Origin: Pocillopora damicornis
Taxonomy: Eukaryota
Direction of reading: 5' to 3'
Length of the DNA: 64,000 nucleotides
Assembly (NCBI RefSeq): GCF_003704095.1
Contig: NW_020844379.1
Location: 1-64,000, forward strand
Position 1 is the first letter of the stretch; the number at the start of each line of letters is the position of its first letter. This document shows, in pieces, positions 929 through 18,252 of this stretch. The notes beneath the pieces are model-generated. The model saw only the letters and a list, made by a program, of their open reading frames with translations. It made no database searches and was not told the origin of the DNA. A program made the position numbers and the translations under genes.

Positions 929-3428
929 ATGAAGTCAGCCGTATTTGGTTGGATCATGCTCTGTTGTGTATTTCCCCAAGGTTCAGGTAAGCAGTACAAG
1001 CCTGTCCAAATGAAGAATATTCGTCGTGGCATCAGAACGAAACACTTCATTGCTTAAATCTTTTTAACTTACTTTTGTCTAAAACAGTCATGACAGTACC
1101 TAAGGGTTGTCATTGCCAGCTTAATGTTTGACTCAGCTCGTTGTTTCACTTGTTTTGCTTTTCTCACCTCAATATGGTTTAATACTAAACATTGGCTGAC
1201 CAGTTCTTTGCAATATCATTGACAACAGACTGTGTCTTAATGATCGACGTTCGTACTGATGTGTGTGCGTACTTTAGACTTGAGAGGTACGTTACTCTTC
1301 GTAATTTGGGATTTCGACTGACTTAACAAAATAAATCCTAAAAAAAAAGGACTACCTTAATGGAGGCGTAAAAGCCTATTGGCTACATAGCGCTCCGAGT
1401 CGAATGCACTGATGTTGACAAAATACTTTGTGTTAGAGCCAATAGCAGTTTGGAGCCAAGCTTATGTAGACGGAGGGCTGTAAAATGTTTTGAAGTTAAA
1501 CCACAAATGTTTTAAAGAAGCCAAAGGTATACTGAAACCCAGTATTCTTTTCATTCACGCTCGCTGCAGATATTTCTTTACCCTTTGATTTGAAAAGTCA
1601 AAACAGGTGCTTTGCTGGGTTAAGTCACTGTGTAATCATCTCTTGTGTATGCATGTAGAACCTTAGGTTGTATCCGGCTCGTAATCTTCTTTAGGACGTG
1701 AACCGCGGAGATTAGCCCCATGTAATTGAGGTATACTGCAAGTCGACTAACACATATCATAAACACCTTTGCAGAATGCATGAACATCCATGGAGGGCGA
1801 CATATAAAAATGAAAAAAGAGTGGAAAAATAAGAAAATGATTTTCAAAACGGAATTCCAAGCGAAAGGAAGTGTTACAGCCAGACCAGAAATCGAAAGCA
1901 AAAACATGGAAAAAATGTTGGCCGGGTAAGCATCCGTTATCTGTCTCAAGTTTATCTACTGCTTTTTTCAATTTTTTCATTTCTTTTTTTTTTTGTATTT
2001 TTGCCCAAGGGGAGGGGCACTAGTTAAGCTTGAGGGTTTTTATTTCAGCGTTAGAGCTCTCTGCTAAGGGCAATTATGATGATTACCAAAAGTCTCTGTT
2101 ATCATTTTGTTTTCAGGAGAATAGCACCCAGTAAACCTTTGACACAGAAAAGATCAACAAGTTCTTCACAAGACTTAGACGGGGCAGCAAAGATCATTTC
2201 TCTTCCAGCAACTAGAAAAGATGTTTTAGTGAGAAATCCCCAAAATGTCCACTTCGCTAAGAAAGTCGTAGTTGGTAGTCAGTTCCGAAAACTTTTAAAA
2301 AAACTGTACCAAAATCATTCGAAAGATGTTCAGGCTATCAAAAGAAAACTAACTAGTGAACAACTCCAGTTGTTAGAATCAAAAGAGGAAGGCGAGGACG
2401 ATAAAGCCGACATATACAGCATCGAAGGTAAATCAGAAGCTTCCAAAAATAAAACAGTCGTCGAACTCCGAGCTGCAATACTGAGGTTATTGAACGAAGT
2501 TGCAAAAAAGGCTAAATCAGCCCACAACGCTGAACAAAGATATAAACAAGACGAATCATCGAGACACCCTTTTAGAAGAAAAAAATTCGGCCAGACTTTA
2601 AAGACAGAGATAGAAGAAAGTTATGATCATAGCAGAAGCCCATCTTCCATAGCTAAAGGAGAGGATCTCTCTGCAAAGCGCGCAAACTATTTGGATCTTC
2701 TTAACTTCATCACACGAATGAAAAGCACGGACATTGGAAAAGATGTTGATTTGTACAACACTGATAGTATGCAGAGTTCGAGTATGATGGTAAACAGTGG
2801 CATGAATAAAATGCTGAACTCAAGAGATCTAATGACACAAATTCCTAACACAGGAAATAGGCAACAAGTAAAGGAAGAAAAGGGAGTCTTGCCAGGAGAG
2901 GGAATGCAAATGCAGGAATTAAATCTTGCGAAACAAAGGTGGCTTCTTGAAGACCAGTTGGAAAATCGCATCGCTCAACTTCAGTCGAAAGCGCGATTAC
3001 CTGTGCCCCAACAAGAATTTCCACAAATACAAAATTCTCAAAACAATGACATGACAGACTTTATGCAACGTCTTCAGAATGTGATCACAACTCCTTCACT
3101 TGGGCCTATACCCCTTTCATATCGAGGACCAGCCATGTTTCAAAAGCCGTCATTTCTTCCTCGTGTTAATCAATATCTACCTTTTGCACGACCATTCCCC
3201 GCCACCGAAACGCGGTTACCTTTCTATCGACCAATGAATCCAAGACCTCCATATCCAATGGATGATGAGGGAGAAGATGATAATGAAGATGACGATGATA
3301 ATTCCGACTATGACAATGATGAACGAGATGAGCCTCCACCACATCATTCGGACCGTGAGCACGAAGATAGTTACAATGCTGACGAAGATGAAGGGGAGCA
3401 AAGATACCCTGACATAGACGAAAGATAA
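929..3428 (+). CDS. Gene A: secreted orphan protein (~506 aa) with basic/helical N-half, Pro/Arg/Phe/Tyr segment and Asp/Glu-rich C-terminus
   Basis: Exons 929-986, 1775-1925 and 2117-3428 are joined by GT-AG introns of phase 1 and 2; 1521 nt in frame. N-terminus MKSAVFGWIMLCCVFPQGSEC is signal-peptide-like. Tail DDEGEDDNEDDDDNSDYDNDERDE. Confidence 0.8.
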
Positions 3429-3847
3429 CACTTTCGTTTTTGTCAGCTTCTATTGACGTTCTGTATATAGATAATGTCACAACTCTGTTATTTCATTTTA
3501 ATGTTATTTCGTTTTAAGCTAGTCCGGTTACAACAAATTTTGTAAAACCCCAGTATGTGTGGAAGTCTTGAGATCTGCTCTGCTCTAGGAATGATAAATC
3601 TTAATGTTTCAATTAGTTCGAAGGGTTCCACCTAAAGCGTTTAGATCTCGGTTTATGTTTTTGTCAAAGATGATCAAGATGGCCAAAACAATAATAGCCT
3701 ACACTATTGTGTGTCTCACGTCGTAGTCACTTCTGCTGTAGATCGCTAATGCAGACCCCTAGGACTACTCCAAAAGTTGAGAAGTCGACTAGTTACGTGT
3801 CACCTAAACATAAGATTGTACTCCACTGTGATTGGTTGGTTTCCACA

Positions 3848-17100: not shown

Positions 17101-18252
17101 ACCGGATAAAACACTTAGGTTACTTCGAAACGTACAACGATCAAAGCTATTGTATGTAGTGTTAGTGCAGTACTTTTTCAACAAAAAGACCAACGTGGTG
17201 CGACTAAGGAACCTATCAGAAGGAGAATTCCTTCTTCTACATAATCAGCTTCCTTATAAGCACTGTAGTTACTTAAGCAGACCAACGAAATTTACCTTTC
17301 AACTGACTAGCGAGATGTCCAGCATTGCCGCATCCACCGAAACTCTACAGAATAGCGAGACTGCACTAAGAGACGGATACGATCTGAAGTCTTGTTCAGT
17401 GGGTCTTCTACAAACCCCCTGTCCAAGTATCTGACCACCGATACTTAAGACCCACTGTTAACTTTATCTTTGCCATCAATGACTATTAGCTGCTGCTCCA
17501 CTTTAATCTGCTCTACTGTGCACAATGATCACCATTTCTCGTTCTATTGTTACAGTACCATTAACTGTTACGAGACATTATGGAAATATTGAATTCAACC
17601 AGTTTGTCAGTTTCGTCTGATCGCTTCCGTGCATACAAAATGTCCAGCTGAGCTTTTAAACCGCTAGTTTTTTTTAAATGGAGAGTAATAGGATAGCCTG
17701 ACCATCGAGGCTACAAACGATAGCCTGCGGTCCTATCGAGTTGGCAAAAAATAGATGAGAAATCAGTTTGACTCTCCTCGAGTCAGATTCATCCGTAACA
17801 TCGGTTATCTATCAATCCATGTAATTCTGTAGCTCTCGGAAACATTCATAATGGTTCTTAGCACGGTTCCTCCGGTACTAGAGACCTTAAACCTTAATTG
17901 TTTTGAAATTACTAAAATGGCGGTCAGAATTAAGTGTTACGAGGAGAGACCATGATCATGGTGGTTTTTTATCCTGCCTACAGACAGCTCTGAGGATGGC
18001 GAGCGATGGTCAGAATGGTCCAAGTGGTCACATTGTACGACAACGTGTGGTGGAGGATTGACTTATTCCAAACGCAGGTGCATGATTCATCTTCCTTCAG
18101 GTCACGGACAGAACTGTACCGGCAAGAGTATCAAGGTTCGACTCTGTCACCTTAACAGCTGTAAATCCACTGAAACAAAGGAAGTAAACCTAGAGCGCAC
18201 GTTAAGTGAAATGGCAGGGGACAGAAGTCATATTTACAGGCCATCAGTATAA
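14163..18252 (+). CDS. Gene E: secreted Asp/Asn-rich protein with C-terminal thrombospondin type-1 (TSP1) domain (~515 aa); exon 1 appears frameshifted
   Basis: Proposed exons 14163-14219 (needs +1 nt), micro-exon 14941-14964 (or to 14976), 15523-16491, 16924-17151 and 17984-18252, all phase 1. The last exon encodes WSEWSKWSHCTTTCGGGLTYSKRRC...C...RLCHLNSC. The join at 16491 uses a weaker gtttgt donor. Confidence 0.6.

What the first reader, a model, noticed from the sequence alone, without database searches (positions are those of the whole stretch)
929..18252. Tandem array of five co-oriented secreted genes with one shared exon plan but very different compositions
Seen: genes A-E are all on the + strand and each has a 57-97 nt signal-peptide exon ending in a gtaag donor (phase 1; E after a 1-nt correction). 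All other introns are phase 1 except one in A. B and C both begin their predicted mature chain with RP[SA]T, and B, C and D share a GVP motif shortly downstream. Payloads are acidic (A, E), His/Tyr/Gly/Pro-rich (C, D) or polycationic (D tail). Inference: a rapidly diverged family comparable in organisation to the vertebrate SCPP cluster; the oppositely charged members could co-assemble by complex coacervation.
Basis: partly seen in the sequence, partly recalled or inferred. Interest (0 to 1): 0.78.

Follow-up and report, generated by a model that had tools for sequence, protein, structure and literature searches.

The report
Old anthozoan cluster of secreted proteins
Five neighbouring genes in a Pocillopora coral do encode secreted, mostly floppy proteins and are transcribed, but only two are demonstrably related, and at least four of them also sit together in skeleton-less sea-anemone-type genomes, so this is an old conserved neighbourhood rather than a fast-evolving skeleton-building family.

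Summary
All five + strand genes are real, and each has a short signal-peptide exon closed by a phase-1 intron. Nine of the ten coding introns are phase 1.

RNA contigs from three studies confirm every D junction and both E introns. E uses a GTACGA donor at 15038, so no 1-nt correction is needed. A, B and C match annotated genes in Stylophora or Oculina.

- **C and D are paralogues.** They share collinear N- and C-terminal blocks (permutation p about 0.004; BLASTP 3e-6 through an anemone intermediate).
- **A, B and E are not shown to be related.** They have no significant similarity to C, D or each other. E shares only a six-residue dibasic motif. B has its own dispersed paralogue.
- **B and C are not fast-evolving.** They are 75-91% and 65-87% identical across stony corals.
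- **The neighbourhood predates the skeleton.** Nematostella has B next to C. An unnamed non-scleractinian contig has E, D, C, B and the flanking MFS gene.
- **Skeleton proteomics gives no support.** A, C and E are absent from the published Stylophora skeletal proteome.

My best reading is pro-protein-processed extracellular matrix or adhesion proteins. D has an invariant RGD and a polybasic tail, E has a TSP1 repeat, and A and E have conserved acidic blocks. Function is inferred, and coacervation is untested.

The parts
929..3428 (+). Gene A, 3 coding exons (929-986, 1775-1925, 2117-3428), 506 aa. It has a signal peptide, a basic N-terminal part, isolated predicted helices, a Pro/Tyr/Phe-rich stretch and an acidic tail (net -23 over the last 70 aa).
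   Evidence: Model. It is collinear with Stylophora XP_022788499 (506 aa, 83% identity in exon 3). No Pfam match. AF2 mean pLDDT is 44.9. The tail charge is conserved in 5 species.
4413..5255 (+). Gene B, 2 exons (4413-4509, 5056-5255), 98 aa. It is a small, very conserved secreted peptide ending in HPRG-stop.
   Evidence: Exon 2 is 91/89/75/76% identical in four other corals. A 95-aa gene with the same exons is annotated in Oculina. A paralogue lies at G000:C134:44493-44648. A B-like exon lies beside C in Nematostella.
6287..8694 (+). Gene C, 3 exons (6287-6365, 6809-7327, 8513-8694), 258 aa. It has a signal peptide, a short variable pro-region, RR followed by an invariant 30-aa block, a His/Tyr/Pro/Gly-rich disordered body and a C-terminal charged helix.
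   Evidence: Models. It equals the Stylophora 259-aa and Oculina 253-aa products. AF2 mean pLDDT is 51.7, with the only helix outside the signal peptide at 222-252. The Nematostella orthologue XP_048579819 scores E 6e-32.
11237..13055 (+). Gene D, 4 coding exons (11237-11312, 11714-12190, 12431-12544, 12739-13055). It has a signal peptide, KK followed by a conserved block, a His/Tyr/Gly/Pro-rich body, an RGD exon and a polybasic tail (30% K+R, net +30). The transcript runs from about 11138 to 13253-13331.
   Evidence: All three junctions are in RNA contigs of 3 studies. The tail charge is +24 to +35 in 4 species.
12496..12504 (+). RGD tripeptide in exon 3 of D.
   Evidence: It is invariant in the window, L003, L004, L005 and the non-scleractinian L017.
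14941..18252 (+). Gene E. The ATG exon is 14941-15037 (CDS from 14962, donor GTACGA), followed by 15523-16491 and 17984-18252, giving 437 aa. It has an acidic block, a helical region and a C-terminal TSP1 repeat (18010-18162). A possible 5'UTR exon ends at 14219.
   Evidence: Junctions are; the UTR joint appears in one run only. Pfam PF00090 scores E 6.6e-10, 39.5 bits against a cut-off of 21.6.
6859..6876 (+). Dibasic motif RRQEVV in C. The equivalents are KKHEII in D at 11788-11805 and KKQQVV in E at 15567-15584. It is a candidate pro-protein convertase boundary.
   Evidence: The regex [KR][KR][QH][QED][VI][VILF] gives only 4 hits in the six-frame 64 kb, and three of them are these. Conservation jumps at the site: C 0.51 to 0.98, D 0.60 to 0.83, E 0.63 to 0.77.

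Best explanation
This is a real, transcribed and evolutionarily old neighbourhood of five secreted-protein genes in a pocilloporid coral (Pocillopora). A and C, the two modelled, are predicted mostly disordered. It is not one fast-diverging family.

**Relationships**
- C and D are ancient paralogues.
- E may share only a short N-terminal processing motif with them.
- A has no detectable kin in the cluster.
- B is a small, highly conserved peptide with its own dispersed paralogues.

**Age**
- The order homeobox-A-B-C-D-E-MFS is kept across stony corals of both major clades.
- B-C adjacency is kept in the sea anemone Nematostella.
- E, D, C, B and the MFS gene lie together in an unnamed non-scleractinian anthozoan contig.
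- The block therefore predates the coral skeleton.

**Most likely mechanism (inferred, not shown)**
- Each protein enters the secretory pathway.
- C, D and E are trimmed at a conserved dibasic site. This removes a short variable pro-region and exposes a conserved N-terminus (Gln or His).
- The products act outside the cell as matrix or adhesion components.
- D would offer an RGD loop to integrins and a polybasic tail to anionic partners. E would bind matrix through its TSP1 repeat. A and E carry conserved acidic blocks.
For: **Shown**
- Gene models and junctions.
- Conserved order in Stylophora (L001), Oculina (L018 and L002/L003), a Porites-like coral (L004, 87-92% identical to Porites lutea E) and a fourth coral (L005/L007).
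- C-D paralogy. The N-terminal profile alignment gives z 4.8 with 0 of 300 shuffles reaching it, and z 3.6 (p 0.004) with anemone rows added. Nematostella C against L017 D gives BLASTP E 3e-6. L017 C against L017 D gives 7e-4 on the C-terminal block. tblastn of D exon 3 hits the end of anemone C.
- Spread beyond stony corals. The profile search of 1.84 billion representatives gives 7 clusters, one of them Nematostella XP_048579819. In the tree the stony-coral C proteins form a 100/100 clade that excludes L017 and Nematostella.
- Predicted disorder of A and C.
- RGD invariant in 5 species. TSP1 in E. Conserved charge blocks. Conservation step at the dibasic site.
Against: - No expression pattern, localisation or proteomic detection was obtained for any of the five, so the matrix/adhesion role is inference from motifs.
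- RGD and dibasic motifs are short.
- Synteny in stony corals is conserved generally. The flanking homeobox and MFS genes are conserved too, so linkage need not mean shared function.
- Orientations differ in L017, and Nematostella shows only B-C within 10 kb.
- The taxon of L017 is unnamed. Its place outside Scleractinia rests on one gene tree with midpoint rooting.
- No RNA was laid on A, B or C in this genome.
Confidence: 0.55

Rival explanations
1. All five genes are one rapidly diverged family, organised like the vertebrate SCPP cluster. They build a mineral-associated matrix in which polycationic D coacervates with acidic A and E.
For: - A tandem co-oriented cluster with 9 of 10 coding introns in phase 1.
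- Predicted disordered bodies for A and C.
- Opposite charge blocks conserved while the sequence drifts; the D tail is 37-48% identical yet always +24 to +35.
- An RGD in D, as in SIBLING proteins.
- The language-model neighbours of C are kappa-casein, enamelin and casein at 0.76-0.81. That score range is also reached by a third of shuffled proteins.
Against: - No pair other than C-D is significant.
- B has a paralogue elsewhere with none of the other cluster genes near it.
- B and C are strongly conserved, not rapidly diverged.
- C and B are adjacent in skeleton-less Nematostella, and E-D-C-B lie in a non-scleractinian contig.
- A, C and E accessions are absent from the Stylophora skeletal proteome table.
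- A phase-1 intron after a signal peptide is generic.
Confidence: 0.1
2. The genes are precursors of processed bioactive peptides (hormone- or neuropeptide-like), not structural proteins. Dibasic cleavage would release conserved N-terminal pyroGlu peptides from C and E, and an amidated peptide from B.
For: - Invariant dibasic sites followed by Gln, with a sharp rise in conservation.
- The 30-aa block after RR in C is 100% identical across stony corals.
- B ends in Gly-stop in corals, L017 and Nematostella.
- The mature chains of B and C start with Arg-Pro.
Against: - C, D, E and A are 258 to 506 aa, with few internal processing sites outside the D tail.
- D carries an RGD and E a TSP1 repeat, which are typical of matrix proteins.
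- Conservation extends along the whole body of C.
Confidence: 0.15
3. Null reading. The five genes are functionally unrelated neighbours that happen to be secreted. They are held together only by the generally slow rearrangement of anthozoan genomes. C and D are a simple local duplicate.
For: - The flanking homeobox and MFS genes are equally conserved in place.
- Orientations are shuffled in L017.
- In Nematostella no D or E lies within 10 kb of C.
- No sequence kinship for A, B or E.
Against: - Five consecutive signal-peptide genes without Pfam domains, apart from one TSP1, is an unusual run. A and C, the two modelled, are predicted disordered.
- C, D and E share the dibasic motif at the same place.
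- B, C, D and E stay together outside stony corals.
Confidence: 0.25

Closest known systems
Vertebrate SCPP gene cluster (SIBLINGs, amelogenin/enamelin, caseins)
   Same: It is a tandem cluster of secreted, intrinsically disordered proteins. The signal peptide has its own small exon. One intron phase dominates. There are acidic and Pro/His/Tyr-rich members, and one member carries an RGD.
   Different: - No sequence relationship: there is no Pfam hit, and the language-model neighbours are only at noise level.
- Introns are phase 1, not phase 0.
- Only two of the five genes are demonstrably paralogous.
- The cluster exists in non-calcifying anthozoans.
- The members checked are absent from a coral skeletal proteome.
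Coral skeletal organic matrix proteins (SAARPs/CARPs, SAPs, USOMPs, coadhesin)
   Same: They are secreted coral proteins with acidic stretches. E has a TSP1 repeat, as coadhesin does.
   Different: - A, C and E are not among the accessions in the Stylophora skeletome table (PMC7115838).
- The acidic parts are short blocks (20-44% D+E), not whole-protein acidity.
- C has an orthologue in Nematostella.
Matricellular/adhesive RGD proteins and TSP1-repeat matrix proteins
   Same: D has an invariant RGD in a small conserved exon and a heparin-binding-like polybasic tail. E has a canonical TSP1 repeat with WSxWS and CxxxCG.
   Different: Apart from the TSP1 repeat there are no folded domains. Integrin or glycosaminoglycan binding was not tested.

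Membership tests
SCPP family | Sequence descent from SPARCL1, or matches to the casein, enamelin or amelogenin families. | tested here: not met
   Pfam scans of all large exons gave no such match. Atlas neighbours scored 0.76-0.81 only, which is a noise range.
SCPP family | All coding introns are phase 0. | tested here: not met
   Nine of ten coding introns are phase 1 and one is phase 2.
SCPP family | Expression in mineralising tissue, milk or saliva, and presence in the mineral matrix. | tested here: not met
   The Stylophora A, C and E accessions are absent from the skeletal proteome table. Orthologues exist in skeleton-less Nematostella. Tissue expression itself was not testable.
One paralogous family comprising A-E | Significant sequence or profile similarity between the members. 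| tested here: not met
   hhalign on 10 pairs gave a best P of 0.15. In the N-terminal profile permutation only C-D was significant.
C/D paralogue pair (unnamed His/Tyr/Pro-rich secreted family) | Collinear conserved blocks: a dibasic site, then [VI]x[AT][VL](A)PP..S.L, then G[VI]P. Near the end of the body: YP..DHS...G[DE].GP..[MV]F[LV]. | tested here: met
   z 3.6-4.8, BLASTP 3e-6 and 7e-4.
TSP1-repeat proteins (gene E) | A match to Pfam PF00090 above the gathering score. | tested here: met
   39.5 bits against 21.6, E 6.6e-10, residues 9-59 of exon 3.
Coral skeletal organic matrix proteins | Detected by mass spectrometry in cleaned skeleton. | tested here: not met
   No XP_0227884xx or XP_0227885xx entry in the table of PMC7115838. 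None of the Stylophora, Orbicella or Nematostella accessions searched appears in any searchable paper. The Desmophyllum and Oculina identifiers were looked for only in the Desmophyllum skeletome preprint and were not found. Only main texts and the few held supplements were searched.
Amidated peptide precursors (gene B) | A signal peptide, processing sites and a C-terminal Gly as amide donor. | tested here: inconclusive
   The terminal Gly-stop is conserved in corals, L017 and Nematostella. There are no peptide data.

The most novel reading that the evidence does not exclude
The block is a functionally coupled extracellular 'kit' that arose before the coral skeleton. It would be convergent in logic with vertebrate SCPPs. 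A pro-protein-processed polycationic RGD protein (D) and its paralogue (C) would assemble by charge-driven condensation with the acidic blocks of A and E into an adhesive or interfacial matrix. E would tether that matrix through its TSP1 repeat, and stony corals would later have used it at the tissue-skeleton interface.
Probability: 0.12. Interest if true: 0.75.

Novelty: new member of a known kind. Interest (0 to 1): 0.4.

Why it matters
The work turns five 'uncharacterized' coral gene predictions into something testable:
- a defined, transcript-supported locus;
- an undescribed C/D protein family with no Pfam model, which has an unusually invariant 30-residue N-terminal block and a conserved RGD;
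- a synteny block shared by stony corals and skeleton-less anthozoans.

It also warns against reading secreted acidic or His-rich coral genes as skeleton genes from composition alone.

If the five prove to be co-expressed, the locus would be a tractable invertebrate model for how clusters of disordered matrix proteins evolve and assemble.

Tried and rejected
**Searches that found nothing**
- Pfam on all large exons gave nothing except TSP1.
- tblastn of every exon against the window found no paralogy at BLAST level.
- An own-genome HMM of the C+D N-terminal block found only C and D, so no further members in 234 Mb at that sensitivity.
- hhalign on all 10 gene pairs was non-significant.
- The E-C and E-D profile permutations were non-significant.

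**Literature**
- The Stylophora, Orbicella and Nematostella accessions and three motif words appear in no searchable paper.
- Supplements of the Stylophora cell atlas, the Sycon/coral paper and a Stylophora RNA-seq paper gave nothing. The Pocillopora acuta LCM paper has no supplementary files held, so nothing was searched there. The main text of the Desmophyllum skeletome preprint gave nothing. Expression context therefore could not be obtained.

**Other limits**
- The Stylophora E protein was not on record for a locus look-up.
- D was not seen in the 5 kb after C in the Stylophora locus held. That is the end of the locus, not evidence of loss.
- The region around the B paralogue on contig C134 carries no A-, C-, D- or E-like genes.

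- Spliced models were searched exon by exon by reference. The joined protein sequences were not built or sent to any search.
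Full report
**What the window is.** The sequence is eukaryotic, about 38% G+C. The closest named proteins are from Stylophora pistillata: 83% identity over exon 3 of A and 77% over exon 2 of E. The window is contig C1014:1-64000 of a 234.35 Mb assembly in 4393 contigs. From memory, the assembly size and contig count fit the published Pocillopora damicornis assembly.

**The observation.** Reading the sequence and modelling exons gives five + strand genes:
- A: 929-986 / 1775-1925 / 2117-3428
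- B: 4413-4509 / 5056-5255
- C: 6287-6365 / 6809-7327 / 8513-8694
- D: 11237-11312 / 11714-12190 / 12431-12544 / 12739-13055
- E: 14962-15037 / 15523-16491 / 17984-18252

Each first coding exon encodes a hydrophobic signal-like leader. Each ends in phase 1 on a G|GT junction, in this coral and in its relatives. Nine of the ten coding introns are phase 1, and intron 2 of A is phase 2.

**Transcript and annotation support.**
- RNA contigs of three independent studies span all four D exons with GT..AG junctions exactly as modelled.
- Two studies show E intron 1 as 15037>15523.
- Loose ends behind 16491 read the first bases of exon 3.
- A 1570-nt Logan contig encodes the same 437-aa E protein with its TSP1 end (P0022).
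- A matches the 506-aa Stylophora and 511-aa Oculina products.
- C matches the 259-aa and 253-aa products.
- B matches a 95-aa gene annotated in Oculina with the same two exons.

Spliced models were searched exon by exon by reference. The joined sequences were never built or submitted.

**Composition.**
- C exon 2 is 15.7% Pro, 9.9% Gly, 8.1% Tyr and 7.6% His.
- D exon 2 is 13.3% Pro, 12.7% Gly, 12.0% His and 8.2% Tyr.
- The D tail is 30% Lys+Arg, with pI 12.
- Approximate net charges of the mature chains are A +1, B +6, C +1, D +45 and E -6.

'Acidic A and E' therefore applies to blocks, not to whole proteins. Those blocks are conserved as charge while the sequence drifts:
- A tail: -21 to -26 in five species.
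- E block: -19 to -24 in four stony corals.
- D tail: +24 to +35 in four species.

AlphaFold2 with alignments predicts C as disordered apart from the signal helix, a small hairpin and a C-terminal helix (mean pLDDT 51.7). It predicts A as disordered with isolated helices (44.9).

**Is it one family?** Pfam finds nothing except a TSP1 repeat in the last exon of E (PF00090, 39.5 bits). The exons do not hit each other by tblastn. hhalign on ortholog-enriched profiles is non-significant for all ten pairs.

C and D are nevertheless paralogues:
- Their N-terminal blocks align in register: a dibasic site, a hydrophobic strand, PP, S.L and then G-V-P about 51-54 residues into exon 2.
- The profile Smith-Waterman score is z 4.8, reached by 0 of 300 column shuffles. 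With anemone rows added it is z 3.6, p 0.004.
- A second collinear block lies at the end of the body. Exon 3 of D (YPYSFDHSVDLRGDSGPSTMFV) aligns with the end of anemone C (YPVLLDHSSNMAGENGPGVVFL).
- BLASTP of Nematostella C against the L017 D protein gives E 3e-6 over 87 residues. C against D within L017 gives 7e-4.

E shares with C and D only the hexapeptide class [KR][KR][QH][QED][VI][VILF], 15-27 residues into exon 2. That pattern has just four hits in the six-frame 64 kb, and three of them are these sites. E is not otherwise significant. A has only a looser RKDVLV.

B belongs to a different small family. A paralogue sits alone on contig C134, and another lies upstream of A in a second coral.

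A phase-1 intron at the signal-peptide cleavage site, in a g|g context, is a general property of animal secreted-protein genes (PMC1626468). The shared exon plan is therefore weak evidence of common descent.

**Conservation and age.** The order homeobox-A-B-C-D-E-MFS recurs in several corals:
- Stylophora (L001: A, B and C)
- Oculina patagonica (L018: homeobox, A, B, C and the start of D)
- an Oculina-like ENA assembly (L002/L003)
- a Porites-like assembly (L004, 87-92% identical to Porites lutea E)
- a further coral (L005/L007, with a second copy or haplotig in L006)

Named C homologues also come from Orbicella and Desmophyllum.

Identity to the window ranges as follows:

| Exon | Identity to the window |
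|---|---|
| A exon 3 | 36-83% |
| B exon 2 | 75-91% |
| C exon 2 | 65-87% |
| D exon 2 | 50-60% |
| D exon 3 | 75-91% |
| E exon 2 | 37-54% in the other coral loci (77% to the Stylophora protein) |

B and C are therefore slow-evolving. The block RRQEVVAVPPVATSILEGPYLPPANA is invariant in the five-coral alignment.

A profile of C was scored against 1.84 billion representative proteins. Only seven clusters matched. One is Nematostella vectensis XP_048579819 (E 6e-32).
- In the Nematostella chromosome a B-like exon (47% identity, E 5e-20) lies about 4 kb upstream of the C orthologue.
- In an unnamed ENA contig (L017) the arrangement is MFS, E (-), D (-; exons 2 and 3 fused, RGD kept), C (+) and B (-).
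- The C protein of L017 falls outside a 100/100 stony-coral clade that includes both Porites-like and robust corals.

The neighbourhood therefore predates the stony-coral skeleton.

**Link to the skeleton.** The Stylophora skeletal proteome table (PMC7115838) lists 39 XP_0227 accessions. None is in the 0227884xx or 0227885xx range of A, C and E. None of the Stylophora, Orbicella or Nematostella accessions searched appears in any searchable paper.

**How it most likely works.** Two things are shown. The proteins have signal-like leaders. A conserved dibasic site marks a sharp rise in conservation in C, D and E (0.51 to 0.98, 0.60 to 0.83, and 0.63 to 0.77).

The rest is inferred:
- Pro-protein convertase cleavage removes a short variable pro-region and exposes Gln or His.
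- The mature proteins act extracellularly.
- D presents an RGD that is invariant in five species, including the non-scleractinian, together with a polybasic tail.
- E carries a canonical TSP1 repeat.
- A and E carry acidic blocks that could pair electrostatically with D.

This fits matrix or adhesion proteins better than skeleton-specific proteins. No expression or localisation data could be obtained. A peptide-precursor reading remains open, and is strongest for B. So does a plain 'unrelated neighbours' reading.

**Verdict.** Interest is moderate.

Noticed in passing
window 19210-55266: Directly downstream of E lies an array of at least six intronless MFS_1_like (MFSD6-type) transporter genes on both strands: 19213-20895 (-), 24156-25706, 28168-29754, 31105-32769, 38358-39707 and 40696-42372 (-). 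One more is split across 52582-55263. An MFS gene also flanks E in the other corals and in L017.
   Followed up: partly
window 7521-7681 (intron 2 of C): A palindromic element with 69-nt arms, 80% complementary and 23 nt apart. It is a MITE-like repeat. At least 40 copies at 89-94% identity were scored, out of 621 first-look candidates in the genome.
   Followed up: yes
window 11810 (exon 2 of D): All four RNA runs carry an in-frame AGC insertion behind 11810 relative to the assembly. They also carry several shared substitutions. This is an allele or strain difference.
   Followed up: no
window 14219-14941: One RNA contig joins 14219 to 14941 (GT..AG). This suggests an untranslated first exon for E, which would make the signal-peptide exon exon 2. 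It was seen in one run with only 26 nt on one side.
   Followed up: no
L002:18202-18297 (= L003:260-355): The Oculina-like coral has an extra copy of the last 32 codons of exon 3 of C (69% identical), between C and D. It looks like a relic of a partial tandem duplication. No counterpart exists in the window.
   Followed up: no
L016:6100-6706 (Nematostella): The 3' end of the B-like exon is tandemly repeated about six times in units of about 76 nt, so successive copies fall in different frames. The annotated 493-aa gene model there fuses a retroelement-type domain to this exon, ending at 6175.
   Followed up: no
G000:C134:44493-44648: A dispersed paralogue of exon 2 of B (E 2e-13, about 39% identical). 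It keeps the DGVP..TTA..SYL.G and YYP motifs but lacks the Gly-stop ending.
   Followed up: partly
window 36430 (- strand): The only other six-frame hit to the dibasic motif class (KRHDVF) in the window. It was not examined and is probably chance.
   Followed up: no
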